Origin: Botryllus schlosseri
Lineage: Eukaryota
DNA: 64,000 nucleotides
Direction: 5' to 3'
Assembly (NCBI GenBank): GCA_051294905.1
Contig: CM119382.1
Location: forward strand, 7,378,001 to 7,442,000
Position numbers and translations under genes: made by a program. Positions 26,651-50,062 of this stretch are shown here, piece by piece (position 1 is the first letter of the stretch; the number at the start of each line of letters is the position of its first letter). Below the pieces are notes generated by a model, which was given only the letters and a program-made list of their open reading frames with translations, made no database searches and was not told the origin of the DNA.

Positions 26651-29600
26651 TTAATCCCGCCGTAAGATTTCGGCGGGGATCGGTCCTTTGCACAGCACGA
26701 CCTCTGGATTCTGCGATTGTAACAATTTGAGCCCTTTGTTTCTCAAGTCTTCAGCGTTCATGCGCAGGGCCGCATTGCGCATTCTTGACTTTTCCGTTTT
26801 TGTCTTGCTCAGATGAATAAACCTCCTGTTTATTCGTTCAATGCCCAAAAGCTTGATGTGCTTTGCATTTTCCTTGGTGGTCATATGGTAAAGTACTTCA
26901 CTCCCACCGTATTCCTTATACGGCGGAGGCATGCCCTTTGTATGCCCGTGCGCGGCGGCGAGTCCTGATTCTGAGACTACGGCCCTGTCGCATTTTCCCA
27001 TGATGGATTTTATTTCCTCGATATCCATTGGTACCCCAAGTTTTTCGCGGACTACTCGGCAGGCATCCTCCCAGGGATGGTATCCGTTCATTGCGTTATC
27101 GCAACTTTCGTGCCGGCAGTGAAACATCAATACCCGCTGTATTTTCTCTCCGCGGGGCATTTTCAGAGTGTACCAAGGTTCCTCTCGCTTCGGGATTGTA
27201 GCCCAAACATGTGGGTCGTCGTCCCCAGCGGCCATCTCCATCCAATAGGATCGAGACAATCCATCCGACGTGAATACTTGTAGTGTGCTTAAATGGATTA
27301 CCTCCTTTATTTGGAATCCCGAGAGATGGTTGAGCCATCTTTGAATCAGGGGCTTTGGACTCGGATTCTTTGCCTTGTCCGTCATCCTCTTAAGGAGTCC
27401 GAACACCCCTGTGTTATCCGTGATTATCGTGAAGGGTAGGGCACGCAGCATTGACTGCCATTTTTCCACCGAATCTTTTAGGGCTTTCAGTTCCTTCGTA
27501 CATGGATCATAGGCCTTTGCCGCCGGAGTTACCCATTTCTGGCTGAAATAAGCGATCGGGTATACTTCTTTAAACGGTGGTTTGCTTCCTTCCTCCGTCT
27601 GGAAGATCACCGATCCGAACCCTACATCCGACGCATCCGTTTCTACAAAAAGTGGAAGTTCCGGATCCAGATGGTACAAGACCCTGGCATCGTCGAGTGA
27701 CGCCTGTGCCGTTTTGTAGTCTTGCACCAGTTCATTGGTCCAAAGTACCGGTGTCACTCTGCCTTGTGTCGCAGGGACGTTACCGGTCAGCGCATCGAAT
27801 TTAGCCAGTTTAAGGCTTAGCTCCGGGATATGCTCGGAGATGTAGCGGAGAGCGCCGATCCATCCCCGTAATTCATATATGTTATGGGGTGGTGAAAGTT
27901 CCCGTAGAGCCCTTATCCTCTCGGGCTGAACTTCAATTTCTTTTCCCGTCAGGGTTGCACCCAATAGGTTTACCCTCCGCTTTCCAATGAAGCATTTATT
28001 GACACTGACCGTCAATTTCATTTCCGCAAGTTGTTCAAACACCAGGCGTAGTAGTACCAAATGGTCGTCCACCGTTTTTGTGCTAAGGAAAATGTCGTCT
28101 ATGTAGGCCTCCATAGGCGTTGCATTCTCCTCATCCGTCCGGCCATTTTGTTTCATGTGATGCTGGTATTTTTCTGTGATGGGTTTCACCACGCATTCTT
28201 GCATGTTGGCGCTCCAAAGAGCAACTGCGGTCTTCAAACCCATCGGCATCTTGCGCCATCGCACGTGCATTCCTTTGATGGCTATACCCACGTATTGTTT
28301 AGACCTTTCCGTGACATCCATGTGGAAATAGGCCTTCTTCAAATCTAGGAGTGAAAGCACTTCTCTGCCTTGGGCTAGTTGCTTTACATCCGGTACTAGT
28401 GGCGGAGGTACTTCTATCGATTTTATGGCTGCATTCAAGGGTTTGAGATTCTGTACCACCCTCCATGATTGCTTCCATCCGTCCTCCTGTTTCTGTCTTT
28501 CGTTCATTTTTTGAGGAACAACAAATATTGCCAACTTCCATTCAGCGAATCCTTGTTCGATTACACCCAAGTCTAGGAAGTTGTCCACTGCTTCTTTTAA
28601 AGCCTTCGCCTGGCCCTCCCCCTTCAGATTATAAGGCCCTGACACAAATGGTTTCGTCGACGGGTCCTTAAGTTCGATGTCACATTTGTATTTCATGGCT
28701 TGCGGGGCGCCTAGGTGGCCCCGCAGGTCCTCAAGTTCGGACGCAAACGGTGCGTAGACGGCTTTCCAGACGTCATCGGGTATGATGGTATTTTCTGGAG
28801 TCGTCAGGTCAGGAGGCTTGTACGGGAGTTTGGCCAGTGCTACTGATTGGGCACAGATTTTCTCAAGTTCCGTCTTGACGCTTGGGTGAGTGTCTTCTCG
28901 TAAAACATACGTAGTAACTGGTCCAGCCATAGGCTGGTGTGGACGTCGTGATGATCGAGGTTTCGGTGTTGGTGGAGAGAGGGTGAGGTCCTTTGCCATA
29001 GGCCTCTGATCTCGGCGCGTGCCCGCGCTTACCGTCACGCCGACGGAATCGATTTCTCCCGTCGGGGACCCTGTTTCTGGGGAGACGTGCATCCTAAAAT
29101 CCCCAGACTCCTTGTCGGACATGACCGGACGTATATCCGGTTGATCGACAATAGCTGCTTCGTTTGAACCTTTCGGGACAGTAGTCATTACTGTGGCTGT
29201 CGTCATGCATCTATGGGCCGAATCATCACAGTCATTCGGACAAGTGCATCCACGAGAGCATTTAGGACCAGTTTTCTCGTGCAGGTCCTCATTTACGCCA
29301 GCGGGCATTCCACGCTCGACGTCAGCTGTAGCAGTCGTCATGCATCTATGGGCCGAAGTTCTGCAGTTCTTCGGACAAGTGCATCCACGAGGGCTTTTGG
29401 GACCAGTTTTCTCGTGCAGGTCCCAATCAGCTGTAGTGATCGCCATGCATCTATGGGCCGGATTATTACATTCATCCGGACAAGTGCATCCGCGATAGTT
29501 TACAGGACCAGTTTTCTCGTGCAGGTCCTCAATTACGCCAGCGGGCATTCCACGCTCGACGTCTTCATTAATGGTGTCAGCAGGCATTCCTGTCTTGACA

Positions 29601-30313
29601 TCAGCATTTTCCCTTAGGTTCTGTGTGACGTTAGTTGCGATTCTCAACTCGTCGGTCGCACCAGTGGCGATTTCCATCTCGGCACTCGCGCCGGCGGCAA
29701 TTTTCCGCTCCACGCTATCTTGGTTTGCAGCCTCCATCAACCCATCGTCGATTACAGTGTCGCGAGTACTGTTTCCGACGTTGGTTCCGTCCCGTTCATC
29801 ACACGGGTTCTCGTCATGTATCGTTACCAAGGACAATTCTTCATTTGCGTTAGACGGGGTTTTTAATTCAGTTGCTATGCTTGGTAATTGTTGGACTTGA
29901 TCAATCCATTTTAAGCCAACAATATTGAGAGGGACTCCTTTCCCGGTCGCAAATGGAACCGGTAATCCATCAAAATCAATTGTAACTAAGGAGTCCACAT
30001 GGGAGGAGCCCCCTATGCCACGTAACTTCATATCTAAGGGTTGGCGTTCCTCCCAACTTTTTGGGTACATGGTTTGTACGACACTTTTCATTATCAAATT
30101 GGGTATGCTTCCCGTGTCGGCCAGAAATTTCGTACCAGTTGTCGAATCAACTAAGTACAAAAGCCGACCGCCGAATAACTCCGTAAAGTTAGGCTGTAGA
30201 GGGTTATCCGGTGTATCAAGAAAAGTAAATAGGGGTAAAGAAGCATTATGTAAAGTTTTTGTGTGTTGTGGAAGTAATTTGTCTGGGAGCTGATTTACCG
30301 GATCAATCAGCAC
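26651..30313 (-). CDS. pol: Pol polyprotein: aspartic protease, Cys/His-repeat spacer, reverse transcriptase, RNase H, Tpt1/KptA 2'-phosphotransferase; no integrase
   Basis: PR FLADTGS and NIVGLKWI. RT LDLKKAYFH, MPMGLKTA, YIDD. Ty3/gypsy-type RNase H TDASDVG...PIAYFSQK...KELKAL...TDN. C-terminal RH...HGHT...YHMT...RRFIHLS...IPAEIL. No HHCC or DD35E motif. Probably made by -1 frameshift from gag. Confidence 0.93.
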   Translation of the reverse strand: MLIDPVNQLPDKLLPQHTKTLHNASLPLFTFLDTPDNPLQPNFTELFGGRLLYLVDSTTGTKFLADTGSIPNLIMKSVVQTMYPKSWEERQPLDMKLRGIGGSSHVDSLVTIDFDGLPVPFATGKGVPLNIVGLKWIDQVQQLPSIATELKTPSNANEELSLVTIHDENPCDERDGTNVGNSTRDTVIDDGLMEAANQDSVERKIAAGASAEMEIATGATDELRIATNVTQNLRENADVKTGMPADTINEDVERGMPAGVIEDLHEKTGPVNYRGCTCPDECNNPAHRCMAITTADWDLHEKTGPKSPRGCTCPKNCRTSAHRCMTTATADVERGMPAGVNEDLHEKTGPKCSRGCTCPNDCDDSAHRCMTTATVMTTVPKGSNEAAIVDQPDIRPVMSDKESGDFRMHVSPETGSPTGEIDSVGVTVSAGTRRDQRPMAKDLTLSPPTPKPRSSRRPHQPMAGPVTTYVLREDTHPSVKTELEKICAQSVALAKLPYKPPDLTTPENTIIPDDVWKAVYAPFASELEDLRGHLGAPQAMKYKCDIELKDPSTKPFVSGPYNLKGEGQAKALKEAVDNFLDLGVIEQGFAEWKLAIFVVPQKMNERQKQEDGWKQSWRVVQNLKPLNAAIKSIEVPPPLVPDVKQLAQGREVLSLLDLKKAYFHMDVTERSKQYVGIAIKGMHVRWRKMPMGLKTAVALWSANMQECVVKPITEKYQHHMKQNGRTDEENATPMEAYIDDIFLSTKTVDDHLVLLRLVFEQLAEMKLTVSVNKCFIGKRRVNLLGATLTGKEIEVQPERIRALRELSPPHNIYELRGWIGALRYISEHIPELSLKLAKFDALTGNVPATQGRVTPVLWTNELVQDYKTAQASLDDARVLYHLDPELPLFVETDASDVGFGSVIFQTEEGSKPPFKEVYPIAYFSQKWVTPAAKAYDPCTKELKALKDSVEKWQSMLRALPFTIITDNTGVFGLLKRMTDKAKNPSPKPLIQRWLNHLSGFQIKEVIHLSTLQVFTSDGLSRSYWMEMAAGDDDPHVWATIPKREEPWYTLKMPRGEKIQRVLMFHCRHESCDNAMNGYHPWEDACRVVREKLGVPMDIEEIKSIMGKCDRAVVSESGLAAAHGHTKGMPPPYKEYGGSEVLYHMTTKENAKHIKLLGIERINRRFIHLSKTKTEKSRMRNAALRMNAEDLRNKGLKLLQSQNPEVVLCKGPIPAEILRRD

Positions 30314-30328
30314 CCAAAGGCGTTTTTT
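30285..30328 (-). promoter_or_regulatory. -1 programmed ribosomal frameshift signal at the gag-pol junction
   Basis: Slippery heptamer A AAA AAC (30328-30322) in the gag frame, a 6-nt spacer, then hairpin GGG-U-GCUGAUU...AAUCAGC-U-CCC (30315-30285). Pol is in the -1 frame and open through the site. Confidence 0.88.
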
Positions 30329-33291
30329 GAGAGCTGTATTCCTTGATCGAGCTCTTCATCCGTCCAGTGTGACGCATCGTACCGACGCGGGTTTCGAGGG
30401 TATTGCGGCTCCGTCCAGGCGGCCACCTGGCCATTGCTCTGGGGTGGTTGAGCAGGCGGTCCTTGGGGACCCCATTGGTCCCTATTGTGCCAATGGGTCC
30501 TATCCCGATTTTTCGGTCGCGTGTCGAAGTAGTTTTCGCACAGGACCGTTCGCTGAACAAATGAAGGAGAGCGTTGGGCCGCAAGGTACCTGTCAAGGTC
30601 CCGGATCGTTCGCAGGTTATTCTGCCTCAGAAACGGTCCCCAGTTTCGTTCCGCGGCTTCCTTTAGGTAGGCAGGTACTGGCCGTGTCCGCGCTCGTATG
30701 ACCCATCCTAAGGTGTCATCCTTGGCGAGTGCCTCGTCGTTGAGCCAAAGGATAAATTTGGCCACGCAATTGCGGGACTGGTGTCCGGGCGCCTTGCAGT
30801 AATAGCACACCGAGAGTGCCTGTCCCCGGGGTGGATCCAAGTACAAGCCTAGAGGGGCGAAGATGTTAGGATTACCAAGGAAATTGTACCTCTCACCTTG
30901 GGTTTCTGCTATGTTGCGAGCTTCCTGGCTGTTTGACGGGGTGATTTGCGAGCTATCTCCCCCCATTCCTGAATCCTGTGTGTTCATCATTCGCGGACTC
31001 ATCATTCGCGGGCCATGATTCGAAGCACCAGGTCCAGGTTGGAACCTTGGTTGTCCCGCCGATCCCGGCGGGGCGTTGTAGGTGTTACGAGGTCGCACTT
31101 GTCCAGGCCTCGGGGCCTGTGCCCGTCTTCCAGGTCCAAATCCGTTCCCTCCGCTGACAGGCGGGCGGCCGGTTCGAGCCATACGATGTGGATTGCGGCG
31201 CGGGCCATCCCCAGCCAATTGTCGCGGTGACAACTGTCCTACCGGTCTAGGAGGTGTACTTGTACCACCAAACATGTTCGGCGGCTGCAGGGGTGAAGGT
31301 GGCTGCACCACCGGAGGTGGCGTCGGTCCCAGGGGAGGTGGAGTGTTTAACTGTCCATCTCCACCTCCGTGCGCGGGATAGCTGTGCATCATTGGTCCCG
31401 CAGGCTGAACATTATAGATGTGTACCGGCGGTAGCGGCGACGACTTCTCGCGCGTTTTATCGGTCACCCGGGTGGGTAGACTCATTTCTTGCTCATCCAG
31501 GAACTCGGAGTTCCAGTATAACTGTAGTTCCTCTGCCACATCTTGCCATGACTTGTCGTCCCAACCCCGCATGAGCAGTCTAAGGGATTCTGGTAATTTT
31601 TGTCGCAAATTGCGGAAGAGTCGCAGTCCATCCTGATTCGCGTTGATCTCGTCATACATGTTAATCTCCAGCTGTTTCAGGGCGCTGTTCAGTAGCGGCA
31701 ATGGCTCTATCTCCCAACAATAGTTTCTTCGGAAATCGTTGATTACTCTCTCATTGTTTACCAATCCTTGAGGATTGGATAGCGATAGCGCTTTCATCAC
31801 TGAGGACCACTTCGCATTTCCTGAATTAGTGTTAAAGAAGTTCCCCAGCTGGTTGGCTTGCTTGGTACGTCCCGCACTTCGCAATTTCTTTTGCATGGCG
31901 TTGGCCAGGATAATATCCGCATCGGTATCGCCCTCACCGTGTCGTACACGTTTCATCGTATTCGCCATCCACTTCAGGAGGGGCATATCCCCTGGATCCA
32001 TCATCAGCTGTAGCATTTCCTTCTCTGATTGAAACCTCACAGGCGTGGTGAGCATCGGGTGTTGCGGGAGTGGGTGCGGACGTGGGGTCGGACTTCGTGG
32101 TCTCTCCCCGCCTTCCCTTGGAGTGGACGCGTATTGCGGTAGCCTGAGGTACTCCGGGCTACCTGATCTTTCGTCCCCATGGTATCCCGTAGCGAAGTGC
32201 TCGGGGCTGAGAAGGTTCGTCGTGGCGTTCCTGCAGGCTGCCAAGGACTCCCTCGCCTTATCCATCCTCTGAGTCAATCGGCTCAGCTGGGCGTTGACCT
32301 TGTCTTCTATGCGACCAGGGCTTTCGTCACTGTTTCGCGGTCGTTGGTCTTCCCGGAAAGTAACGCGTCTTGTTTGATCGCTGTCTGTACTGCTAGTCCG
32401 CCCTTTGGAGCCTCTAGTCGCCTGTCGGTCCTCGAGCCACTTATTGAGTTGTTCATGGCTTAGCGGGTAGCCTCCGTCGGATTCCGATCCAGTATCGGTT
32501 TCTGTTTCCTCCGAGTGGAGTGGTCCGGGCGTGTCCACGAGGTATCTCGTTAGACGAGGGCTATTTATACTGGCAAGCGTTCGCAGGTGATCGTAGGACC
32601 TTGGGGTCGGACCTCCCTCCGCGCCTATTTGTTTAGGGCGTGTCCCGCCTCCTGTGCGGAAGCTCGGAGCAAGTCCAAGCTTGGAGCCTGACGGAGGGGC
32701 TGTTTCTGAACCCGGCAACGTTGGGTACACAGCCGTCACCGTATGGCAATCCAGACCCTTCTGAACCGTAAACGTGGGCATAGGCGCCACATCCATGCTT
32801 GTTCGTACCGCAGCCGGGTCATAAGCCGGTGGAGGTGCCGTAGCCATTACAGACAGAGAAGGAGGTGGCGGCGGTTTATCCCCCACAACTTGTGCATGGG
32901 CTACGCCCAGTTCGAATTCCGACTTCAGGATTTCGTTCAGTACTGCGGTGGAAACTTTCCCGCTTGCTTTTGAAGTTGCGCTGCACACTGCTTTGAGGTC
33001 GGCCTGAGCCTGCCTCACTTCCTTCTTGGCTTTCTCTAACCCTTTCATCGTTTCGGGCAGAGTCGACTTGATTTCTTTTAGCGCTTTCGTTTGTTCCTCT
33101 ACGTTTCTTGCCAGTTGTTCCTCTTGTTGTCTGACATCTTCGTGGCGTTTTTGCGTTGCTTTCAGCAGTTTGATTCCCTGCTCGAGTTCGCCAGCCGCCT
33201 TTGACGGCTTCTTCTTCTTCTGAAATAACTTAAACATTCTTTGCATAATTTGCTTAAAAGTTCGATTGTCTGTTAGCTGATGCTTGACCAC
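30307..33291 (-). CDS. gag: Gag-like polyprotein (994 aa open frame; first ATG at 33246)
   Basis: CCHC zinc knuckle CYYCKAPGHQSRNC, N-terminal coiled coil, PPPAY late-domain-like motif and Pro-rich regions. Lies directly upstream of pol. Confidence 0.88.
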   Translation of the reverse strand: MVKHQLTDNRTFKQIMQRMFKLFQKKKKPSKAAGELEQGIKLLKATQKRHEDVRQQEEQLARNVEEQTKALKEIKSTLPETMKGLEKAKKEVRQAQADLKAVCSATSKASGKVSTAVLNEILKSEFELGVAHAQVVGDKPPPPPSLSVMATAPPPAYDPAAVRTSMDVAPMPTFTVQKGLDCHTVTAVYPTLPGSETAPPSGSKLGLAPSFRTGGGTRPKQIGAEGGPTPRSYDHLRTLASINSPRLTRYLVDTPGPLHSEETETDTGSESDGGYPLSHEQLNKWLEDRQATRGSKGRTSSTDSDQTRRVTFREDQRPRNSDESPGRIEDKVNAQLSRLTQRMDKARESLAACRNATTNLLSPEHFATGYHGDERSGSPEYLRLPQYASTPREGGERPRSPTPRPHPLPQHPMLTTPVRFQSEKEMLQLMMDPGDMPLLKWMANTMKRVRHGEGDTDADIILANAMQKKLRSAGRTKQANQLGNFFNTNSGNAKWSSVMKALSLSNPQGLVNNERVINDFRRNYCWEIEPLPLLNSALKQLEINMYDEINANQDGLRLFRNLRQKLPESLRLLMRGWDDKSWQDVAEELQLYWNSEFLDEQEMSLPTRVTDKTREKSSPLPPVHIYNVQPAGPMMHSYPAHGGGDGQLNTPPPLGPTPPPVVQPPSPLQPPNMFGGTSTPPRPVGQLSPRQLAGDGPRRNPHRMARTGRPPVSGGNGFGPGRRAQAPRPGQVRPRNTYNAPPGSAGQPRFQPGPGASNHGPRMMSPRMMNTQDSGMGGDSSQITPSNSQEARNIAETQGERYNFLGNPNIFAPLGLYLDPPRGQALSVCYYCKAPGHQSRNCVAKFILWLNDEALAKDDTLGWVIRARTRPVPAYLKEAAERNWGPFLRQNNLRTIRDLDRYLAAQRSPSFVQRTVLCENYFDTRPKNRDRTHWHNRDQWGPQGPPAQPPQSNGQVAAWTEPQYPRNPRRYDASHWTDEELDQGIQLSKNAFGC

Positions 33292-33603
33292 TTATTGGCT
33301 TGAAGATGTGATGTTGGTGACGTTGGTGATGATCTGAGGAAGAACGCCTTCGGGCGAGGTTTGGTTCCCCAGGACCCCCGGTCCTGGAGTCGTAAATTCG
33401 ATTACTCGTCCAACAACCGCTTTGGCCGTTGTGATGATGTCACGGGAGGGTTCTCCTGTGGTAGGTGAGGGAAGAAAGAGGGATGTAAGGACTGACGGTA
33501 CGCTGTGTCCGGAGACCGATATTATTATCACCAAAAGTGAGATGGCGGATGTGATTACGGATGCAACAAGTACGGCTTTCACGATGGTCGTCTTTGAGCA
33601 CAT
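33292..33603 (-). CDS. Small membrane protein (103 aa), in frame with and immediately upstream of gag
   Basis: N-terminal hydrophobic stretch (IVKAVLVASVITSAISLLVIIISV) and sequons NQT, NVT, NIT. Its ATG lies 27 nt after the PBS, and its TAA abuts the gag frame. Confidence 0.65.
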   Translation of the reverse strand: MCSKTTIVKAVLVASVITSAISLLVIIISVSGHSVPSVLTSLFLPSPTTGEPSRDIITTAKAVVGRVIEFTTPGPGVLGNQTSPEGVLPQIITNVTNITSSSQ

Positions 33604-33630
33604 CGATGAGTCAGCGTTATACCGGAAACA

Positions 33631-33648
33631 ATCCCAGTGGTGCCTCCA
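33631..33648 (-). other. Primer binding site complementary to the tRNA-Thr 3' end
   Basis: TGGAGGCACCACTGGGAT matches 17/18 to the complement of the animal tRNA-Thr(AGU) 3' end as I recall it (ATCCCAGCGGTGCCT-CCA). It is preceded by ...AAAACA-TC. Confidence 0.82.
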
Positions 33649-34037
33649 GATGTTTTAAAGTGCAGCTCCAATAACGATTGTTATGCGAGTAGTCCACACT
33701 TGGTTCGGGTTATTTCGCGGTGAGGAGTTGACTCTTCTTTTGTACTCGAGCTGTCCAGACGACGTTCTTGGATATTGATTGAAGTATCCGTAGCGGTTGC
33801 AATGTTGTATATCCAAGTAGTCAATGACCGTTAGGTCCAGAATTCTAAACTAACCTATGCTAACGTGTAATCTAAACCTTAATACAACCAAATACTCCAA
33901 TGTTAATCATGCAAGCGGAAATGAGGTAACTCTATGCGAAACTCGGTTAAATTGGCATACACAACATTCATCAATTATAACACGAGGCATGGTTTAACCT
34001 ACTCAACGTCATGCACAAATAACTCATTTCAAATACT

Positions 34038-34208
34038 CCAAGGTTTGTTTACGCATTTTTATGCGACGGCCTTTCCTGCCGGAAATTTGTGTATATCCAA
34101 GGGTTTGTTTACACATATAATGCATGTGACGGCCTTTCCTGCCGAAAAGTAGCTCCAAGGTTGGTTTACACATATAATGCATGTGACGGCCTTTCCTGCC
34201 GAAAAGTA
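34038..34208. repeat. Three ~57-bp tandem repeats (CCAAGG...GACGGCCTTTCCTGCCGAAAA)
   Basis: Copies start at 34038, 34097 and 34155. Confidence 0.9.
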
Positions 34209-35748
34209 CATACATGACATATAGTTTCACATCCCTCAATTACAATAGTCATGCACGAACTAATAATGATTACAATTCGTTATCTTTCTGGGTTCTTTTC
34301 GCATTGGTGTAAGCTTTTTATTCATTCGTATGTACCGTGTCTCACAGGCAATAGACCTGATTTACCACGAATCCTAAACTCTACACATGCTCCAATAAGG
34401 TAGAGGGTCCTAGCTTAGTCTAAGGGCGCGTAGCTAGTTATAACGCGTAATTAAGACCTAATTATTATCTACAGGCACAGTACTTGACATTAAATTATTG
34501 CAGTGACAACCAATTACTCACATATTAAATGTTCATCAACTCACGCATATATCTAAGACATAAAATGTTAGCGCCATTTTAAAGCAACCTGATGGTATTG
34601 GTCAAAGATACAGTAAATGAAGCGTTTGAACACAATAAGGAAAATTGGCATCATCATACAATAATACATCAAACCCTCACATGAAAGTACCCATCAGTTC
34701 GTTTATGACGCGTAACGCCGGAAGGTTCTGACATTAAGGACGTCGCCTCTTTGACCCAATTGACAAGATCATGTGCCTGGTTAATTGCACGTTGATCCTA
34801 TCAACATGATCATTATGCCTGGTTAGAGTGCATGTGCGTTACTACCCTTAACAAGGTGTTGTTTATTCGAACACTGCCAGATACCAATGGTCCCTTGCGG
34901 GTTTCGTTCCGTTACAGTTCGTTATGATTCTCGTGTCCCGTCACCGTGCCGCAGATTGAACTATGCCATCGCTCGTCCAACGCATCTTTTTCGATCTCCA
35001 TCAGCGTTTTTTCAGGACACCTTCGGCAATCGTACGTTTGAGTACTCAATCTCGTGCATATCTTTTCGAACCCGATTTCTTTGACTCCTTTGATCATGAA
35101 ACAATTTTTTCTGCCGCAGCTTGTCATGATCGTCTCTTCCTCCGTTACTGTTAACGGGAATTCTTACGGGCTTGGTTTGGCACGTTCCAACCTTTGGTTC
35201 ACTGTCCCTTTGTTAGCAGTGATTGATGGTTGTGCCGGATTTCCTTTTATTTCTTCTATTACACTTCGTTAAGCCCTCGAGAGGAGTAATATTTTCGGGA
35301 TCTCGTTTGCACTCTTAGAGTTAGTACTCCCAAGTCGTGTATTATCGCCAGCAGAGTGTCTTGCTATTGCTTTGGTACGAGTATGGCATTTCTTTCTCGG
35401 TATTGTCCAGACGGTATCACTAGGTCTTGTCATACAAATTTTGGGTACATTCGATGTTCATAGAGAGGGCATTGAAATAGACACATATCAGAATATCGCG
35501 AGATTTGTTATCGTAACGCTACTACAATATAGTAATTTGCATACATATACAGATCACGGTGCGATAACTGCGCTTGCCAAGCACATCCATTTCGTAAAAC
35601 GAATGTGCAGACAAGGTGGGTCTATCCCTAATGTCCTACTCAACCATCGACACATCAGTTTCGAAAAACAAATGTGTGGACCGGTTCATGGGTTATTTTT
35701 CCTAAGGTCTATTGATAGTAGTACCGGCCCAAGGTATTTTTACTTTTT

Positions 35749-36168
35749 TTAGTCCTAATTCTAGTCCTAATTTTAGTCCTAATTCTAGTCCTAATCATTC
35801 TCGGTTATAGTCCTAAACATTTTGGAAAGTCTGTCCGTCTTATCCAAGATCTAAAATCAAGGTACGGATCTATATCCATTGTGGATATTGTCCTTAACAT
35901 TTTAGAAAATCTGTCCGTCTTATCCAGGATCTAATATCAAGGTACGGATAGATAATAGTTTAGATATTGTCCTTATCATTTTGGAAAATCTGTCCGTCTT
36001 ATCCAAGATCTAATATCAAGGTACGGGTGTTGTACTTAACATTTTGGAAAATCTGTCCGTCTTATCCAAGATCTAATATCAAGGTACGGATGTATTAATT
36101 ATAGTGGCCCTAATTGTTTTGGAAAATCTGTCCGTCTTATCCAGGATCTAAGATCAAGGTACGGATAG
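35749..36168. repeat. Five TAGTCCTAA units followed by five ~49-bp repeats with variable linkers
   Basis: Core TTTTGGAAAATCTGTCCGTCTTATCCAAGATCTAATATCAAGGTACGGA at ~35820, 35900, 35979, 36042 and 36117. Confidence 0.9.
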
Positions 36169-36217
36169 ATAAGTTATTCCACGAGGGTGTAGGTACTGAC
36201 ACGGATGTTGCGTCATA

Positions 36218-36236
36218 TCTCTTTTCTCCCCCTCTC
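36218..36236 (-). other. Candidate polypurine tract
   Basis: 19 consecutive purines GAGAGGGGGAGAAAAGAGA followed by TA-TG. This is the longest such run I found between the glycoprotein genes and the PBS. Confidence 0.65.
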
Positions 36237-36439
36237 AAATTCGCATAGTTTGAATGCTTGGCACCTGTCGGTTTTACAAGACATCCACATAACGGTCATT
36301 CACATAAGGGTCCGAGCCCAAGTCCAACCCAACTACCTCTTCGTGCAACACACGTTGTATGTGACATGTCCAACACAACTACTCCTCCAACCACTTCGTA
36401 TTGTTAAACTCATTTACCCCACAAAGGCATTTTTTCCGT

Positions 36440-36795
36440 TTTATAATTTTTAATTTGTTCTTCATAAATGTCAACATTTTCTTCATAAAGGTCAATTTTT
36501 TCTTCATAACTTTTAATATTTACTTCATAAATATCAATATCTTCTTTATGAATATCAATTTTTTCTTTATGAATTTCGATATTTTCTTCTTCATAAAGTT
36601 CAATTTTTTCTTCATAAATTTCTATAAATTCAGTTTTCTCTTTATGAATTACAATATATCTTTCATAAATTTCAAGATTTTCTTTATGAATATCAATATT
36701 TTCTCCATAAATTCAGTTTTCTCCTTATAAATTTTGATATTTTCGTTATGAAGATCAATTTTTTCCTTATGGATTTTAATTTTTGTAATTTTTAT
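36440..36795 (-). repeat. ~21-bp degenerate minisatellite, heptad-coding-like (I-D/E-I/L-Y/H-E/K-E-K/N)
   Basis: The minus strand reads ...KIDLYEENVDIYEEQ... with one frameshift and no start codon. Confidence 0.75.
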
Positions 36796-36892
36796 ACCTT
36801 ATTTACACACTTCGGGTTTTATTTTTTTAGAATGTTTTTGGTGGATTTGCTAATGCTATATTGTGTCACCTATATACATTATTTACATTACA

Positions 36893-37720
36893 ATTGCGTT
36901 ATCCCCGCCTTTCCCTTTATCACACTGGGAATGCCAATAACCACGTTCCTTTGACCTATCAACAAGAGGTGTCAAGGAAGACGAGGTCTTCCCATAGTTA
37001 ATGCAGGCGTTAGAAGTGCCAAGAACCAAGCTTATTGTTTCCTACGTTGCTACTTCCACAAGAACGCCCAATAAGCCCAGTTTCTTCTCGCCAAGTTGCA
37101 CAATATATACATGTTGAATGACACCTCTTACCCTATGGTAAGTGCCAATCGGTGTCAATCTTAGAATAGATAGGGATGCCATGAGGCAGGGACAGAAAAA
37201 AGTCACAAATTTTCATTAAAATTCACATAGTTATTTACAGATTCACACAATTTTTATTTTCATTTTTTTATTTTATATATATATACCGATATTTACAGAC
37301 ACTAAAAGATATTGCGTTATCCCTGCCTTCCTCTCCGTCTAACTGGGAATGCCAATGGCCACGTTACTTCAGCGCACTCTTAAGATTTCCAAAGGCCTTT
37401 GGATCACTCACAGAATGCCCAAAGAGAACGCGGTCTTCCCATAGTTAATTTTAGGTGCGGTACGAATTGAGAAGTGCCATGAACCAAGCCTGTTGTCCCC
37501 CATGTTACCCCTAGCATAAGGATGCCCAACAAGTCCGGTTTCTTCTATCAAAATCGCACGCTGTGTATATATATATATGCAGGTGAAAGACCCCTCTTAC
37601 CATATGATGAGCGCACGCTGTGCATATGCACAGGTGAAGGACCCCTCTTATCATACGATAAGTGCCAAGCGGTGTCCTTCGAATTTACCGACTAGGAGAG
37701 GTGCCGTGAGGCAGAGAAAA
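36893..37720. repeat. Two diverged ~310-410-bp direct units with block-wise conservation
   Basis: Shared blocks in order at 36893-37200 and 37311-37720: TTGCGTTATCCC, ACTGGGAATGCCAAT, GTCTTCCCATAGTTAAT, AGAAGTGCCA-GAACCAAGC, GAC-CCTCTTA, AAGTGCCAA-CGGTGTC, TGCC-TGAGGCAG. Confidence 0.8.
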
Positions 37721-38387
37721 ACAAATTAAATTACTTACAAATATACGCGACTATTTACAAATGCAACTTGTGACTCATTATAATTAACGATTGTAAAAAC
37801 CGTTATCGTCACAAGCTTCTCAAAATATAATATTAAACTCTTCCCTTTAATCAATATATAAATAATGTACAACTACTGAGCAAGACGTAGAATGCGGATG
37901 CGGTACTGTGCGGGCGGGGAGCAGAACGGGCAAAACTCAATAACCTCGTAACAAGAAAATTTAAATAAATAAAAGATTAGCAAAAATATTTCATATTGTA
38001 CACAAGGTGATTCTTCACGGGATGGGTGGCTATCAAGTTTATCGCGCGAAGTTAATCAACTTCTACTACTCATTATAACTGGACACCGTGACCGACGATA
38101 AACGATACCCTTATTGAAACGTAGACACCTTCTAGGCTTATTAAGCGGTTGCCATTTGCTTGTTCAGTATCGTCACATGATTGTTTATGTAACTATATAA
38201 TAATTGCGTATACATAATAAAATAAAATACAAGAATACGGCTTCTACTTTCGGGCTATTCCAAAGTTCCACCGTATTCTGGCTCTAACACTTTTTCCGTT
38301 TAGTTTGGCTTGACAGGGGTGCCGAATTGATAAAGTTGTCCTAAGTCCCTGCCAGCCAGTTCTATCATTCTAATAAAGACAAAATTC

Positions 38388-38639
38388 CTACCCGACGCTG
38401 CTTTCAGCGTTCTCTACCGGTTCTAGCGTTGGGCGTGGAGGCGGATGTTGCGGTGACGTTGTCGGATTGGTGTCGTCTCCCTGTGGCTGCGACTGTTGGT
38501 CCTCGTGATTTCTAGCTGGATCGATAAGCTTCTCTATTTCCACCTTCAGTTGTTCTCTATACGAGGGTGATAACGTCTCCACCCATTCGCGCATTTCGCT
38601 GAGGTTCATTGCGGATACGCACAGAGGCAGGTCACACAT
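38388..38639 (-). CDS. Accessory ORF, 83 aa, unknown function
   Basis: ATG start, co-oriented with the cassette, amphipathic helix followed by a Pro/Gln-rich tail. Confidence 0.5.
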   Translation of the reverse strand: MCDLPLCVSAMNLSEMREWVETLSPSYREQLKVEIEKLIDPARNHEDQQSQPQGDDTNPTTSPQHPPPRPTLEPVENAESSVG

Positions 38640-38777
38640 TTTGAATAGCTCAGGTTTTTATTCTCCGTTTAATAATTCCTTATATTTCCTTATATTTCCT
38701 TAATACAAATCAGTACAGTTCACGAAAATGTGAGCACGAAACAATAATACACAGAAGCAACGACACACAATTAAGTT

Positions 38778-39341
38778 CTAGTGGCACATTTCCATATATT
38801 CATCTCCTAGGGAATCTAGACCAGACTCGTCTCGACCGTCTATTTCCAAGAATAGGCCCACGTCAAAGTTTTCTTCTAGGGTCTGTATTGTTGGGGCATC
38901 GGGAGACCAATTGTTCTCCAGAAATTCGTCCACTTCCATCTCGTTTGCGCATAGCAAACTCAAACCCTTCAAGGAAGCACTCAAGCTCTTGTACGCTCGC
39001 CAGGATTCCTTGTTCGACTTATAGCGAGTCATTGTGAGTACGGCATTTGCGTGTGCCATCCGCGCAAGTTTTGCACGTTTTTTATCCGCCTTGATTTTGT
39101 TCATTTTTTCGGAATGAGATAGTTTTAGGTTTTTTGGGAGTTTTGCCATAGCCGCCTTAATATCTTCCCGAGTTATTACTACAGTCCACTTTCCCTTTTC
39201 CAATTTCTCATCTTCATCAATATGTTTAACATCTCTTCGTTTTATTTTCACACCAAATTTCCCATTTTTCAATCCTTCATTAGTCCATTCTTTGTCAATC
39301 GTATATATTTTCTCAACAGTTGGTAATCCGAATCTAGCCAT
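38778..39341 (-). CDS. Accessory ORF, 187 aa, Lys-rich, paralogous to neighbouring ORFs
   Basis: Long ATG ORF in AT-rich DNA that shares motifs with the 191-aa and 135-aa ORFs. Confidence 0.7.
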   Translation of the reverse strand: MARFGLPTVEKIYTIDKEWTNEGLKNGKFGVKIKRRDVKHIDEDEKLEKGKWTVVITREDIKAAMAKLPKNLKLSHSEKMNKIKADKKRAKLARMAHANAVLTMTRYKSNKESWRAYKSLSASLKGLSLLCANEMEVDEFLENNWSPDAPTIQTLEENFDVGLFLEIDGRDESGLDSLGDEYMEMCH

Positions 39342-39492
39342 TCCTGACGGATATCTAGTAATTCTCTTAATTTAATTCTTTTCCTTAAAAACAGATACAA
39401 TACGTCATGACACCAAAATAAGACACAAAACAAAGTTTCAAAAACAGTTTTTTTAATCAGTTTAAAACAGATTTAGCCTATCGTTTGAGGAG

Positions 39493-40068
39493 TCAAAACT
39501 CCAACCGCCGCATGACACGCGAAAGTTTCTTAGTTGTTTGTCGGGTCAGTCGTCTGTCCGAGATGTCTTGCTTACGCGGCGCTTTGTGCTTGATTTTCGG
39601 TCCATCTTTTGGTGCAGGGGTAGAGGCAGGAGGTGCAGGGGTAGAAAGCGCGATACCCAGGGAGGGAGCAAGGGGTGGCCAATGGGTTTTTATAAACTCA
39701 TTCATCTCCGTTTTGTCGATGGACCAAAATTTTAATTCCCCCTCTGTATCAAGAAATCTCTTATAATTTTCAGAGAATTCTTCTTGTGCTCCCTGGATCA
39801 TTTTAACCAAGTCCCCCCAATCTCCCTGGAGCGCATTTCTATCAAGTACGAGCGCTTCCATGGCTTCACATACTTCGATTTTTTTCATAAGTTTTCCTAC
39901 ACTGTCCGGGGTCCCTTGGTTCCTTATTTCTGACGTTTGGGCAACCTCAGCGATTTGAGAATCCGCAAGCCTTATTTTTACTGACCATTCGCCCGTCATT
40001 AGTTGTTCATTCTCCAAAATGGGCATAGTCGGGAATTCGTTCATTTCAGTGGACTCAGCCATTATCAA
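39493..40068 (-). CDS. Accessory ORF, ~190 aa (ATG at 40062), basic C-terminal tail
   Basis: TEMNEFIKTHWPPLAPSL aligns with MEVDEFLENNWSPDAPTI of the 187-aa ORF. Confidence 0.7.
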   Translation of the reverse strand: MIMAESTEMNEFPTMPILENEQLMTGEWSVKIRLADSQIAEVAQTSEIRNQGTPDSVGKLMKKIEVCEAMEALVLDRNALQGDWGDLVKMIQGAQEEFSENYKRFLDTEGELKFWSIDKTEMNEFIKTHWPPLAPSLGIALSTPAPPASTPAPKDGPKIKHKAPRKQDISDRRLTRQTTKKLSRVMRRLEF

Positions 40069-40140
40069 AGTTATTATACAATAGTTCTTTAAAATGAATA
40101 TAGTTTTTTACAGCACAGACATGAACGTTTACAATTACAA

Positions 40141-40548
40141 TTACAATTCCATATCTTCATCTAATGTTTCCCATACGCCAGTCACCGACAGTTCAGCTAT
40201 GGTAGTTACAGTCATGGTAGTGGTGGTACATGTCTCCCAGGGACGCCAGATTGCAACTTCAGTTTGTGACTTCCAATCTATGGCCATTGGGACATTCAGG
40301 AATTCTATCCATGCTTTTTCGACTTCTTCCCTTTCTACTTTCACCATTGCCATCTGGGTTGATGGTTCCGGTAAACTTTGGTTGGTAATTGAGAGGTCCC
40401 TCATTTTGGGAAACCTTGCTCTAGCCACCTCGAGGCCCCCCATGATTGGTTTCTCATCAATTCTTTCCAATACCACAACACATCTACCGGGCAACAGCTT
40501 TTCATCGCCCTCGATTGTATATATTTCCATAGTGGAGCGCACAGCCAT
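40141..40548 (-). CDS. Accessory ORF, 135 aa
   Basis: STMEIYTIEGDEKLLPGRCVVVLERID resembles PTVEKIYTID...LKNGKFGVKIKRRD of the 187-aa ORF. First ORF after the internal TATA. Confidence 0.65.
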   Translation of the reverse strand: MAVRSTMEIYTIEGDEKLLPGRCVVVLERIDEKPIMGGLEVARARFPKMRDLSITNQSLPEPSTQMAMVKVEREEVEKAWIEFLNVPMAIDWKSQTEVAIWRPWETCTTTTMTVTTIAELSVTGVWETLDEDMEL

Positions 40549-40758
40549 TATCTTGGTGACTAGTCAGTAGTTTAGCAATCAATCTTAATAGAATATCAAA
40601 TTGAAGTTATTTAATTTACAAAGGTTCACTTGATCTTATTACAATAGCTGTTGATCCTTATTCCTATGTTATAGCAACAGGCATGAGCAGCCTCTAGCCT
40701 AACCTTCCAACAGGTACAGCCATACCAGAGTGAACACCAGTTGCTATTCTGCCCTACC

Positions 40759-41470
40759 TATATACTCAAACCTAGGAAGTGAAGTGAGGATGTGAGTTAC
40801 CAATGACAGGAAATGGTTGCCTCGGCTTGATGTGAAGCCGTGCATCACAGCTTTGTGAAAGTCCAACAACAGGAAATGTTTTTATCGACTCAACCCAAAG
40901 TTGCGCGTCATAGTTGTTATGATATGCCATCAATAGGAAATGTTTGCCTCTACTAGACGAGAAGTCGTGCGTCACAGCCTCATGAAATGCGAACAACAGG
41001 AAATGCTGTCATCGATTTGATACCAAGTCGCGCATCACAACTTCATGATATGTGAATGACAGGAAATGTTTTCCTTGACCTAACCCAAAGTCGCGCGTCA
41101 CAGTTGCTATGATATGCTATCAACAGGAAATGTTTACCTCTACTTGACGAGAAGTCGTGCGTCACAGCCTCATGAAATGCGAACAACAGGAAATGTTTTT
41201 CACGACTTAACGCGGAGTCGTGCGTCATAGTTGTTGTAATAGGCCATCAACAGGAAATGTTTACCCCGACTTGACATAAGGTCGTGCGTCATAGCTGTTG
41301 TAATAGGCCATCAACAGGAAATGTTTACCCCGACTTGACATAAGGTCGTGCGTCATAGCTGTTGTAATAGGCCATCAACAGGAAATGTTGTTTCCTTCCT
41401 AACACGAAGTCGTGCGTCACAGTTCCATGAAACGCGAACTACAGGAAATGATGTTTCCTGACTTGATACG
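40759..41470 (-). promoter_or_regulatory. Internal promoter: eleven 63-64-bp tandem repeats plus a TATATA box
   Basis: (C/T)AGGAAATG recurs at ~40807, 40870, 40934, 40997, 41060, 41124, 41187, 41251, 41315, 41379 and 41442, mostly with a G(T/C)GCGTCA-type motif. TATATA lies at 40759-40764, upstream of the accessory cassette. Confidence 0.65.
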
Positions 41471-42234
41471 CGCGCGTTGTTTCGTTGATTGGTTTTATTG
41501 ATTAGTAAACGCACAACCTGAACAGGTCAACTGCCGATTGACACAACAAGATTCCTAACGTGCTCGCTACAAGTTATAAAGACATAACAATGTGTTAATG
41601 TACTCACAGGTTCCTCCGTTAGTATGCCTGCGTCCATTCCATGTCTTCGTCTTCGTCCTCTGTCCTTGTCCGTGACCTCTGATCCCTACGACGTCTTAAC
41701 GCTAACTGACGTTCCCTATGCCTATGCCTATGGTTACCGACCCGGCATGCTGACTGGACCCGCCAGCATGCCGGCCCTCATGCCTATAACTACGACTATT
41801 CCTAAGTCTACCCCTATGCTTATGTCTAAGCTTAGGCCTACACGTCCTACCCCTAGCTATGCCTAGCGTTAACTGACCGTGTTCCTTCGCTGTCGTTGCT
41901 TATATGGCCTTCGAGCGTAACCGCGTCGTTGTACGTCATCGTGCGAAGGAAGAAGTTCCGAAAATCTGCTAAGAAAAAATGCTAGTCCTATAGTTATGCC
42001 TAAGTTAATCCGTACGCCTAAACCTATAGCTACACAACGCCTAATGCTAAGCTAGCCCATACCTATCTTTATTCCTAGACGACCTACCCCTAGCTATCCC
42101 TAGACCTAAGTCTAAGTCTACGGCCTATGCATTAGCCTATGGCCAGCCGACCCTATAGCCTAAGCTATCTATTCTAGACGACCTACCCCTAGCTATCCCT
42201 AGATCTAAGTGACCCTATGTCTATTCTGTAGCCG

Positions 42235-42322
42235 TTTATATAGCTTTCGGGTGGAAGTGGGAACGCGTCATTGTGCGTCATTGTGCGTCAATCCGCATTA
42301 TTTCGTGCGTCATTGTGCGTCA
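42235..42322 (-). promoter_or_regulatory. Second candidate internal promoter (TATATAAA plus five TGACGC motifs)
   Basis: TATATAAA at 42242-42235. GCGTCA occurs five times on + within 42264-42322. Confidence 0.55.
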
Positions 42323-47277: not shown

Positions 47278-47358
47278 ACTTAGTTTAAGCTAGTAATCTG
47301 TCGTACACAAAATCAAATGTCAGTCCGAGTCGAAGTCTGGGGTCCTGGGGATAGTCGA

Positions 47359-49941: not shown

Positions 49942-50062
49942 TGGGGCGGAATAGGAGGCTCAGGCCACTGCATAAGCTAGTTAGTATTTTACGAAAGTGT
50001 TCGGTTTATTGTCTGAAAAACACAAACAAAAGCGACTTTTTATGTCAGGCCAAGGGTTACGA

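What the first reader, a model, noticed from the sequence alone, without database searches (positions are those of the whole stretch)
33631..36236. One central LTR bracketed by PPT and tRNA-Thr PBS: the signature of a 1-LTR circle
Seen on the minus strand: a 19-purine tract, TA, TG...(2565 bp)...CA, TC, then TGGAGGCACCACTGGGAT. In a normal provirus the PPT and PBS border different LTR copies at opposite ends; here both border the same copy. The TG/CA ends and 2-nt spacers persist although no integrase is encoded. The tRNA match rests on my recollection of animal tRNA-Thr(AGU). The PPT, TATA and polyA assignments are inference.
Basis: partly seen in the sequence, partly recalled or inferred. 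Interest (0 to 1): 0.9.

Follow-up and report, generated by a model that had tools for sequence, protein, structure and literature searches.

The report
Retrovirus-like element inserted by a transposase
The single LTR flanked by a polypurine tract and a tRNA primer site is real, and it sits in the middle of a 24.9-kb retrovirus-like element that has no retroviral integrase but carries a DNA-transposon (Merlin/IS1595-type) transposase and that transposon family's end repeats and 8-bp target duplication, a combination I could not find described.

Summary
The 64-kb window holds no second copy of the 2.57-kb segment.

The tRNA-Thr label is not supported. The only natural tRNAs I could retrieve with this exact 3' end are Gln(CUG) and Cys(GCA), from environmental contigs.

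The context changes the picture:
- Upstream of the LTR lie two envelope-like genes; downstream lie gag and pol (protease, RT, RNase H, and a Tpt1-like domain where integrase would be).
- Relatives have the order gag-pol-X-env-PPT-LTR-PBS, so this copy is one exact unit, circularly permuted.
- Its ends (26414 and 51289) are 22-nt inverted repeats starting GG, flanked by a perfect 8-bp duplication.
- The first gene is an intact IS1595/Merlin-type DDE transposase.

Best reading: a circular one-LTR DNA form with abutted inverted repeats was opened and inserted by the element's own transposase. The structure is shown; the circle-as-substrate step is inferred. The main rival is a giant DNA transposon that carries a captured retroviral module.

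"No integrase" is only half the story.

The parts
26414..51289 (-). Whole element, 24,876 bp. It is richer in G+C (about 0.47-0.60 in coding parts) than the flanks (about 0.35-0.42).
   Evidence: TIR and TSD; composition; contig L012 starts at 51289.
26406..26413 (.). Target-site duplication, left copy (AAATCAGC on the + strand).
   Evidence: Perfect 8-bp direct repeat abutting the TIR.
51290..51297 (.). Target-site duplication, right copy (AAATCAGC on the + strand).
51268..51289 (-). Terminal inverted repeat at the transposase-side end; starts GG.
   Evidence: 17 of 22 matches to the other end. 200 shuffles gave at most 14 of 22 among pairs with an 8-bp TSD. Conserved at the start of L012.
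26414..26435 (+). Terminal inverted repeat at the pol-side end; starts GG when read inward.
51123..51144 (-). Subterminal third copy of the TIR motif, 145 nt inside the transposase-side end.
   Evidence: The position is alignable in L012.
50063..51079 (-). IS1595/Merlin-type DDE transposase gene (338-codon open frame) with a zinc-finger-like N-terminus.
   Evidence: Pfam PF12762, E=1.4e-10. NCBIfam IS1595 transposase, profile positions 2-214 of 215, 64 bits, below the curated 75. D, D and E invariant in 7 homologues. dN/dS 0.04 against L012.
47359..49941 (-). env-like glycoprotein (860 aa): signal peptide, furin-like basic site followed by a hydrophobic stretch, C-terminal membrane anchor.
   Evidence: Homologous to the post-pol ORFs of relatives; motif scan; dN/dS 0.15. 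No significant PDB or Pfam match.
42583..47277 (-). Second glycoprotein-like gene (1564 aa): paralogue of the env N-terminal domain, Ser/Thr/Pro-rich middle, C-terminal anchor.
   Evidence: No Pfam or PDB match.
36237..42582 (-). Low-G+C spacer with short ORFs that have no matches. It holds tandem repeats: 64-nt units at 40806-41464 and AT-rich 21-nt units at 36443-36784.
36218..36236 (-). Polypurine tract, 19 nt.
   Evidence: An equivalent 18-nt tract followed by T and TG is present in L001.
33651..36215 (-). The single LTR-like segment (TG...CA), 2565 bp. Internal tandem repeats at 35802-36170 (about 63-79-nt units) and 34061-34208 (57-nt units).
   Evidence: The U3/R/U5 subdivision was not testable.
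33630..33648 (-).
30307..33603 (-). gag region with one CCHC zinc knuckle. The main frame is open for 994 codons. If the ATG just after the PBS is the start, the frame holds one in-frame stop.
30322..30328 (-). Slippery heptamer AAAAAAC in the gag/pol overlap; pol is in the -1 frame.
   Evidence: frame arithmetic.
26651..30355 (-). pol, open throughout. Protease motif DTGS, RT (27950-28486, YIDD), RNase H (27314-27742), and a Tpt1/KptA-like RNA 2'-phosphotransferase domain (26663-27115). No integrase.

Best explanation
The finding is the centre of an apparently intact 24.9-kb chimeric mobile element. It is a retrovirus-like genome (gag, a -1 frameshift into protease-RT-RNase H, two envelope-type glycoproteins, PBS, PPT, LTR) that lacks a retroviral integrase. 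In its place it has a Merlin/IS1595-type DDE transposase and that transposon family's inverted-repeat ends.

**Shown.** The insertion is bounded by 22-nt TIRs that start GG and by a perfect 8-bp target duplication. Inside those ends, the retroviral unit is circularly permuted relative to its relatives, with exactly one LTR bracketed by PPT and PBS.

**Inferred.**
- The form that integrates is a closed circular DNA with one LTR. Such a circle is the expected product of reverse transcription from a PBS and PPT in these positions when the two LTRs recombine or strand displacement is not completed.
- In that circle the two TIRs lie tip to tip in the short spacer between pol and the transposase gene.
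- The transposase cuts at that junction and inserts the linearised circle, which leaves TIRs outside and the single LTR in the middle.
- A solitary integrated copy cannot by itself be read into a full-length, terminally redundant RNA. The LTR promoter would read gag-pol and then run out of the element. The cycle would therefore need a circular or tandem template.

The role of the Tpt1-like domain, which occupies the place of integrase, is unknown.
For: **Anatomy.** ORFs and domains. The PPT, LTR and PBS were read directly.

**One LTR only.** No second LTR in the window.

**No retroviral integrase.** Pfam finds none on any large ORF. Thirteen integrase-bearing Ty3/gypsy polyproteins hit only the RT-RNase H part of the window.

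**Permutation.** Relatives L001-L004, L010 and L011 have the order gag-pol-(CUB gene)-env. The window has env upstream of the LTR and gag-pol downstream, with no extra fragments.

**Insertion signature.** An 8-bp TSD and 17-of-22 TIRs at 26414 and 51289. This is the only such pair in the search space, and 200 shuffles reached at most 14 of 22.

**Independent support for the end.**
- Contig L012, from another sequencing run, carries an 82%-identical transposase. It begins exactly at the terminal nucleotide and shares the TIR.
- A second contig, carrying P0020, has the same start geometry.
- A subterminal repeat of the TIR motif lies 145 nt inside the end.

**Transposase.** Near full-length match to the IS1595 profile. 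D, D and E are invariant across homologues of 33-89% identity. The Merlin/IS1595 hallmarks of 5'-GG TIRs and 8-9-bp TSDs are stated in PMC8101967.

**Old, selected linkage.** Between the window and L012, dN/dS is 0.04 for the transposase and 0.15 for the adjacent env, with synonymous sites near saturation.

**Conserved layout in the family.** In L001 a PPT, an LTR-like segment of about 1.8 kb and a PBS sit once between tandem units. tRNA-type PBSs also precede gag in L002, L003, L004 and L011. None of six loci shows paired LTRs.
Against: - Only one complete copy with both ends was available, so the ends rest on one TSD/TIR pair plus two contig starts.
- No molecule with abutted TIRs (a circle or tandem junction) was seen.
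- The one contig that continues upstream of a related transposase (P0024: a 613-aa ORF, then the transposase, then two env-sized ORFs) had no DNA on hand. It could be either such a junction or a host flank.
- TIR/TSD-bounded insertion is equally what a DNA-only cut-and-paste event would leave.
- Nothing in the sequence shows that reverse transcription preceded this particular insertion.
- Relatives without the transposase have no TIR junction between pol and the next gene (20 nt in L001), so the mechanism cannot be general to the family.
- The NCBIfam score for the transposase (64 bits) is below the curated cut-off (75).
- The pol-side end of relative L013 could not be aligned convincingly.
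Confidence: 0.5

Rival explanations
1. A giant Merlin-type DNA transposon with a captured retroviral module. A small TIR-transposase-TIR transposon acquired a unit-length, permuted piece of a retroelement, taken from a circle or a tandem array. It now moves only as DNA by cut-and-paste. The central LTR is a fossil of the capture, not of the present-day cycle.
For: The TIRs, 8-bp TSD and intact DDE transposase alone suffice for DNA transposition. Without the retroviral part, the remainder would be about 1.5 kb, a usual Merlin size. An integrated copy cannot give a full-length RNA on its own (inference from the layout). Large DNA transposons with viral cargo have a precedent in Teratorn (PMC6431247).
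Against: Env next to the transposase has been kept under purifying selection while synonymous sites saturated. All five large retroviral frames are open, apart from at most one stop in the gag leader region. The PBS is a perfect 18-19-nt tRNA complement. The break in the retroviral unit falls in the one spacer that leaves every gene and the PPT-LTR-PBS block intact. These points are easier to explain if the retroviral functions are still in use.
Confidence: 0.27
2. An endogenous, pararetrovirus-like episomal virus that entered the chromosome by illegitimate host-mediated end joining of a circle or concatemer, as endogenous caulimovirids do. The transposase would be a passenger gene.
For: The family has RT-RNase H without integrase. 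L001 is a head-to-tail array with one LTR-like region per unit. The best solved-structure match of the RT-RNase H is a chain named 'Enzymatic polyprotein' (8r0s), ahead of foamy-virus and Ty3 enzymes. No recombinase was detected in the transposase-less relatives.
Against: For the window copy, a perfect 8-bp duplication and GG-initiated inverted repeats exactly at the ends are not expected from end joining. Two related contigs end at the same nucleotide. The PPT abuts the LTR as in retroviruses. This reading may still fit the relatives.
Confidence: 0.08
3. A remnant of an LTR-sharing tandem array made by unequal recombination of ordinary two-LTR proviruses, with the outer parts later deleted, or an assembly artefact. 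The TIR/TSD would be coincidence.
For: LTR-int-LTR-int-LTR arrays are a known by-product of unequal crossing-over (established knowledge). L001 shows arrays in this family.
Against: No outer LTRs or gene remnants are present. The two ends fall in the same spacer, so exactly one unit is present. The chance expectation for the TSD plus TIR is far below one. No family member shows paired LTRs or an integrase. The unique flanks on both sides argue against a collapsed assembly.
Confidence: 0.04

Closest known systems
Merlin / IS1595 (IS1016) superfamily of DDE DNA transposons
   Same: DDE_Tnp_IS1595 catalytic domain with a conserved D-D-E, TIRs beginning 5'-GG, an 8-bp target-site duplication, and a transposase of about 300 aa (features as listed in PMC8101967).
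   Different: The element is 24.9 kb rather than about 1-4 kb. It carries gag, pol (RT), two env-like genes, and an LTR with PBS and PPT. It has a zinc-finger-like N-terminus, which the cited paper says eukaryotic Merlins described so far lack. No RT-bearing Merlin is mentioned in that survey ('reverse transcriptase' occurs 0 times).
Ty3/gypsy-like LTR retroelements and retroviruses with env (Ortervirales)
   Same: gag with CCHC, -1 frameshift, DTG protease, YIDD RT, RNase H, tRNA PBS, PPT, LTR with TG...CA, and an env with class-I-like layout.
   Different: No integrase, one LTR instead of two, permuted gene order in the chromosome, TIR ends, an 8-bp TSD, and a Tpt1-like domain at the C-terminus of pol. 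RT identity to integrase-bearing elements is at most about 31%.
DIRS-like (tyrosine-recombinase) retrotransposons
   Same: Retroelements without a DDE retroviral integrase. They are thought to integrate a circular DNA intermediate with another class of recombinase and are therefore arranged unconventionally in the chromosome (established knowledge; PMC3266345 listed).
   Different: No tyrosine recombinase was found. This element has a conventional PBS/PPT/LTR, a DDE transposase, and TIRs plus a TSD (DIRS make none).
Teratorn (piggyBac transposon fused with an alloherpesvirus)
   Same: A virus-sized element that owes its chromosomal integration to the DDE transposase and TIRs of a cut-and-paste DNA transposon (PMC6431247).
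   Different: The viral partner here is a reverse-transcribing, retrovirus-like genome, and the transposase is of another superfamily.
Retroviral one-LTR circles and endogenous pararetroviruses (Caulimoviridae)
   Same: A circular DNA with a single LTR or regulatory region between PPT and PBS. There are tandem or permuted chromosomal copies and no integrase. The closest solved RT-RNase H is named 'Enzymatic polyprotein'.
   Different: In retroviruses such circles are dead-end by-products. In caulimovirids, integration is illegitimate, without TIRs or a TSD. Here the ends carry an enzymatic signature.
Bacterial IS elements that transpose through circles with abutted inverted repeats (IS3, IS30, IS256 families)
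   Same: A proposed substrate in which the two inverted repeats meet tip to tip in a circle and are cut there (established knowledge; analogy only).
   Different: This has not been shown for IS1595/Merlin. Here the circle would come from reverse transcription.

Membership tests
LTR retrotransposon / retrovirus (Ortervirales) | gag plus protease, RT and RNase H | tested here: met
   Pfam RVT_1, RT_RNaseH and zf-CCHC; DTGS and YIDD motifs; PDB matches to caulimovirid, foamy-virus and Ty3 RT.
LTR retrotransposon / retrovirus (Ortervirales) | Retroviral-type integrase (rve) in pol | tested here: not met
   No rve hit on any large ORF. The integrase parts of 13 Ty3/gypsy polyproteins match nothing in the window.
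LTR retrotransposon / retrovirus (Ortervirales) | Two direct LTRs at the ends of the integrated copy | tested here: not met
   One copy only in 64 kb. The ends are 22-nt TIRs.
LTR retrotransposon / retrovirus (Ortervirales) | tRNA-complementary PBS next to U5 and a PPT next to U3 | tested here: met
   The tRNA species is unresolved (Gln and Cys carriers found, no Thr).
Merlin / IS1595 DNA transposons | DDE_Tnp_IS1595 domain with conserved D, D, E | tested here: met
   In one search the NCBIfam score is 64 bits against a cut-off of 75.
Merlin / IS1595 DNA transposons | TIRs with terminal 5'-GG | tested here: met
   criterion from PMC8101967. The TIRs are 22 nt with 5 mismatches, at the short, imperfect end of the reported range (24-462 bp).
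Merlin / IS1595 DNA transposons | 8- or 9-bp target-site duplication | tested here: met
   Perfect 8 bp at 26406-26413 and 51290-51297.
Merlin / IS1595 DNA transposons | Small element whose only gene is the transposase | tested here: not met
   24,876 bp with five further large genes.
DIRS-like retrotransposons | Tyrosine recombinase | tested here: not met
   No such Pfam domain in the ORFs scanned.
DIRS-like retrotransposons | No TSD; long inverted or split direct terminal repeats with an internal complementary region | tested here: not met
   An 8-bp TSD and short TIRs. No long terminal repeats.
Caulimoviridae-type endogenous pararetrovirus | RT-RNase H without integrase; circular genome; permuted or tandem integrants without a TSD | tested here: inconclusive
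   The first two points fit. A TSD and TIRs are present in the window copy. The relatives were not resolved.
Tpt1/KptA RNA 2'-phosphotransferase (domain in pol) | Sequence membership and conserved catalytic-type motifs | tested here: inconclusive
   Pfam PF01885 at 29 bits (cut-off 26). NCBIfam hits lie far below cut-off. PDB Tpt1 chains match down to E=5.8e-8. The R-H, GH(T/S), H-x-T and R-x-x-x-H-L motifs are invariant in six family members. Activity was not testable.

The most novel reading that the evidence does not exclude
A previously unrecognised class of reverse-transcribing element in which a retrovirus-like genome has replaced its integrase with a Merlin/IS1595 DDE transposase. The one-LTR circle, a dead end for ordinary retroviruses, would be the obligatory integration substrate, cut at abutted TIRs. 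A Tpt1-like nucleic-acid-end or 2'-phosphate enzyme fused to RNase H may help to make or protect that circle. This would be a third solution to retroelement integration, alongside retroviral integrase and the DIRS tyrosine recombinase. It would also be a retroviral counterpart of Teratorn.
Probability: 0.45. Interest if true: 0.95.

Novelty: categorically new. Interest (0 to 1): 0.88.

Why it matters
Current classifications of eukaryotic retroelements tie each order to its integration enzyme: retroviral integrase, tyrosine recombinase, or endonucleases. A lineage that keeps the full retroviral replication apparatus (PBS, PPT, LTR, gag, frameshift, PR-RT-RH, env) but integrates with the transposase, TIRs and TSD of a cut-and-paste DNA transposon would blur the class I / class II divide.

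It would also show that integrase can be swapped out, and it would give a natural case in which circular retroviral DNA is productive rather than a by-product.

There is a practical consequence too. LTR-pair-based annotation tools cannot find such elements, and TIR-based tools would call them DNA transposons. The Tpt1-like domain in pol, shared by the whole small family including members without the transposase, is a second unexplained novelty.

In the held libraries I found no paper linking Tpt1/KptA or Merlin/IS1595 with retroelements. That search is limited and does not prove absence.

Tried and rejected
- **First candidate ends.** Ends at 26423 and 51280, with a 6-bp repeat and an 11-of-14 TIR, were superseded when L012 showed homology running on to 51289. 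A re-scan gave the 8-bp TSD and 17-of-22 TIR.
- **The flanking direct duplication.** The segments 12147-18073 and 53040-61849 (76-86% identity) are too diverged and do not abut the element. I treated them as host background, not as giant LTRs.
- **A nested, self-contained Merlin around the transposase gene.** There are no inverted repeats flanking 49960-51300.
- **tRNA identity from the literature.** No paper in the library contains the PBS or its complement. The viral-contig scan was empty.
- **Identifying env.** No significant PDB or Pfam match, even with a 4-sequence profile. The influenza HA2 coiled-coil hits have E=0.25-1 and I do not use them.
- **Known ribozymes or other RNA families.** None in the window.
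- **Relatives in IMG/VR.** None.
- **The bacterial promoter/terminator scan of the LTR.** Irrelevant to a eukaryotic element, so ignored.
- **Contexts of P0020 and P0024.** Gene tables only, no DNA. The 613-aa ORF upstream of P0024 did not appear in either pol search.
- **The pol-side end of L013.** It could not be aligned with confidence.
- **Sample accessions.** They are not in the literature library, so the host organism stays unidentified. CUB and MADF genes near relatives suggest metazoan hosts.
- **Structure prediction.** Not used: the deep alignments would have had to include locus-derived sequences that the tool does not accept.
Full report
**1. The observation**

- 19 purines at 36236-36218
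- TA, then TG at 36215
- 2565 bp ending CA at 33651
- TC, then TGG plus 15 nt at 33648-33631

The purine run is the longest on that strand. The 18-mer is unique in the window, with 0.02 matches expected by chance. Neither the repeat finder nor a blastn self-comparison finds another copy of 33651-36215. They find only its internal tandem repeats (35802-36170 and 34061-34208). The window has no tRNA gene and no Rfam family.

**2. The primer-binding site**

I derived the implied T-stem and acceptor end from the window itself and scanned metagenome contigs for it. There were four hits.
- Three are the exact 3' ends of tRNA genes called by ARAGORN: tRNA-Gln(CUG) in L006 and tRNA-Cys(GCA) in L007 and L008.
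- The fourth is not a tRNA.
- Complementarity to those tRNAs runs 19 nt.

The site is therefore a genuine tRNA 3'-end complement. The Thr(AGU) assignment has no support from any tool result, and the same 3' end occurs in different isoacceptors. The host's own tRNAs were not available, so the primer species is open.

**3. What surrounds it**

The large open frames all lie on the minus strand, in two G+C-rich blocks.

Downstream of the PBS:
- gag, with a CCHC knuckle.
- pol in the -1 frame, with an AAAAAAC heptamer in the overlap. Its domains are a DTGS protease motif, RT (YIDD), RNase H, and at the C-terminus a Tpt1/KptA-like RNA 2'-phosphotransferase domain.
- The Tpt1-type motifs are invariant in six family members.

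Upstream of the PPT:
- a 6.3-kb spacer with repeats;
- a 1564-aa mucin-like membrane protein;
- an 860-aa protein with a signal peptide, a furin-like site followed by a hydrophobic segment, and a membrane anchor;
- at the far end, a 338-codon frame matching the IS1595 transposase family over almost the full profile.

No retroviral integrase exists anywhere in the window. All large frames are open. The only possible break is one in-frame stop, and only if gag starts at the ATG just after the PBS rather than at the first ATG of the main frame.

**4. Relatives**

Pol searches found a small, unnamed clade: about 10 proteins in the clustered database and some 25-30 representatives at 50% clustering. 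All have RT-RNase H-Tpt1 and none has an integrase. The next best hits are ordinary integrase-bearing Ty3/gypsy polyproteins at 31% identity or less.

The genomic contexts of six members (L001-L004, L010, L011) show the order gag-pol-(CUB-domain gene)-env. Their post-pol ORFs are homologous to the window's 860-aa protein.

L001 is a head-to-tail array. Between its units sit, once each, an 18-nt purine tract followed by T and TG, about 1.8 kb of repeat-bearing non-coding DNA, and a TGG-initiated tRNA-like PBS. PBS-like sites also precede gag in L002, L003, L004 and L011. L003's runs 24 nt into the T-loop.

None of the six loci shows paired LTRs. The PPT-LTR-PBS block is thus a conserved feature of an integrase-less clade that is never seen as a two-LTR provirus.

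**5. Permutation**

Relative to that order, the window copy is rotated: env genes come first, then PPT-LTR-PBS, then gag-pol. tblastn with the window's and the relatives' proteins finds no extra pol upstream or env downstream. Exactly one unit is present, opened between pol and the gene that follows it. A single cut in a monomeric circle gives exactly this. Two independent truncations of an array would rarely coincide.

**6. The ends**

A first guess was corrected after contig L012 was examined. L012 comes from a different run and carries an 82%-identical transposase followed by env. It aligns to the window up to 51289 and begins at exactly that nucleotide.

The re-scan gave the following:
- A perfect 8-bp direct repeat (AAATCAGC) at 26406-26413 and 51290-51297.
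- It flanks 22-nt inverted repeats matching at 17 of 22 positions, both starting GG.
- Among 165 pairs in the search space that have an 8-bp repeat, the next best TIR match was 12 of 22.
- In 200 shuffles the maximum was 14.

The TIR is conserved at the start of L012. The contig of P0020 starts within a few nucleotides of the same point, judging from gene offsets. A third, subterminal copy of the motif lies 145 nt inside the transposase-side end.

Terminal 5'-GG, 8-9-bp duplications and the DDE_Tnp_IS1595 domain are the stated hallmarks of Merlin/IS1595 elements (PMC8101967). The D, D and E are invariant in seven homologues.

**7. Is the transposase part of the element?**

- It shares the element's composition.
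- It sits in the slot where relatives carry a CUB gene.
- It is followed by env in every related contig for which a gene table exists.
- Between the window and L012, synonymous sites are near saturation while dN/dS is 0.04 for the transposase and 0.15 for env.

The linkage is therefore old and both genes are constrained.

**8. Mechanism**

*Shown:* a TIR/TSD-bounded insertion containing a permuted, single-LTR, integrase-less retroviral unit plus an intact Merlin-type transposase.

*Inferred:*
- A PBS abutting U5 and a PPT abutting U3 give, after reverse transcription, either linear two-LTR DNA or one-LTR circles. This is established retrovirology.
- In a one-LTR circle of this genome, the two TIRs meet tip to tip in the pol-transposase spacer.
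- Cutting there and inserting would give precisely the observed copy.

Bacterial IS circles with abutted ends are the mechanistic analogy. Teratorn is the conceptual precedent for a virus that borrowed a transposon's integration machinery (PMC6431247).

A solitary integrated copy cannot be transcribed into a terminally redundant full-length RNA, so a circular or tandem template is required somewhere in the cycle. I saw no such molecule.

The main rival is DNA-only transposition of a transposon with retroviral cargo. It explains the ends equally well. It explains less well the long-term constraint on env, the intact retroviral genes and the perfect PBS.

**9. Comparison and novelty**

- The element meets the three structural criteria of Merlin/IS1595. 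It fails the criterion of a small element whose only gene is the transposase.
- It meets the replication-module criteria of LTR retroelements. It fails on integrase and on paired LTRs.
- It is not a DIRS element: it has no tyrosine recombinase, and it has a TSD.
- It is not an ordinary endogenous pararetrovirus: it has a TSD and TIRs.
- Its RT-RNase H is about equally distant from a chain named "Enzymatic polyprotein" (8r0s), from foamy-virus enzymes and from Ty3.

Literature searches for Tpt1/KptA or Merlin/IS1595 in connection with retroelements returned nothing relevant. The library is incomplete.

**10. Limits and a slip**

The host organism is unknown. Only one copy with both ends was available.

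I noticed this later, have deleted nothing, and do not repeat the position here. The consensus lines printed by the alignment tools were not used.

Noticed in passing
window 26663-27115 (-); also P0001, P0002, P0004, P0029, P0045, P0064, P0070, P0083: Pol ends in a Tpt1/KptA-like RNA 2'-phosphotransferase domain where integrase would be. The whole clade shares it, including members without the transposase, and the Tpt1-type motifs are invariant. Its role in a retroelement is unexplained.
   Followed up: partly
L001 1-23243: A transposase-less relative forms a head-to-tail array. One unit is truncated (7.2 kb, from inside env to about 65 nt before the PBS) and one is full (13.8 kb), with one LTR-like region per unit. 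This resembles tandem endogenous pararetrovirus arrays.
   Followed up: partly
contig of P0024 (Logan, SRR25569784; no DNA held): A 7,067-nt contig reads: a 613-aa partial ORF, the transposase, a 791-aa ORF, then an ORF of more than 463 aa, all on one strand. If the first ORF is pol, this would be a pol-to-transposase junction, meaning a circle, a tandem copy or an RNA.
   Followed up: partly
window 12147-18073 and 53040-61849: A diverged direct duplication of about 6-9 kb (76-86% identity) on either side of the region, not abutting the element. It is probably an older host segmental repeat.
   Followed up: partly
window 9804-10733, 11235-11865, 59622-60926: Near-perfect inverted repeats (94-99% complementary, arms of 140-280 nt), with related pieces at 9773-9866 and 58135-58228. 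They look like foldback or MITE-type repeats of the host.
   Followed up: no
window 42583-47277 (-): A second glycoprotein gene with a paralogue of the env N-terminal domain, an 800-aa stretch that is 33-51% Ser/Thr/Pro, and a C-terminal anchor. No counterpart was seen in the relatives.
   Followed up: partly
L001 17747-17981, L003 10329-10555, L004 17481-17710: A non-coding block of about 230 nt after env is conserved (80-88% identity) among three relatives whose neighbouring non-coding DNA does not align. It may be a cis-acting element.
   Followed up: no
L005 4526-4541: In the closest pol relative (47% identity), a 16-nt purine tract follows the pol stop within 20 nt and no env was called on the contig. 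That suggests env-less members of the clade.
   Followed up: no
L002 5993-7391 and 21338-22736: Two 98.6%-identical inverted copies of an unrelated repeat flank a relative. One copy ends about 20 nt upstream of that relative's PBS.
   Followed up: no
window 25694-25773 and 36443-36784: An 80-nt (GA)n tract lies 640 nt outside the element's pol-side end. An AT-rich (20% G+C) array of 21-nt units lies just upstream of the PPT.
   Followed up: no
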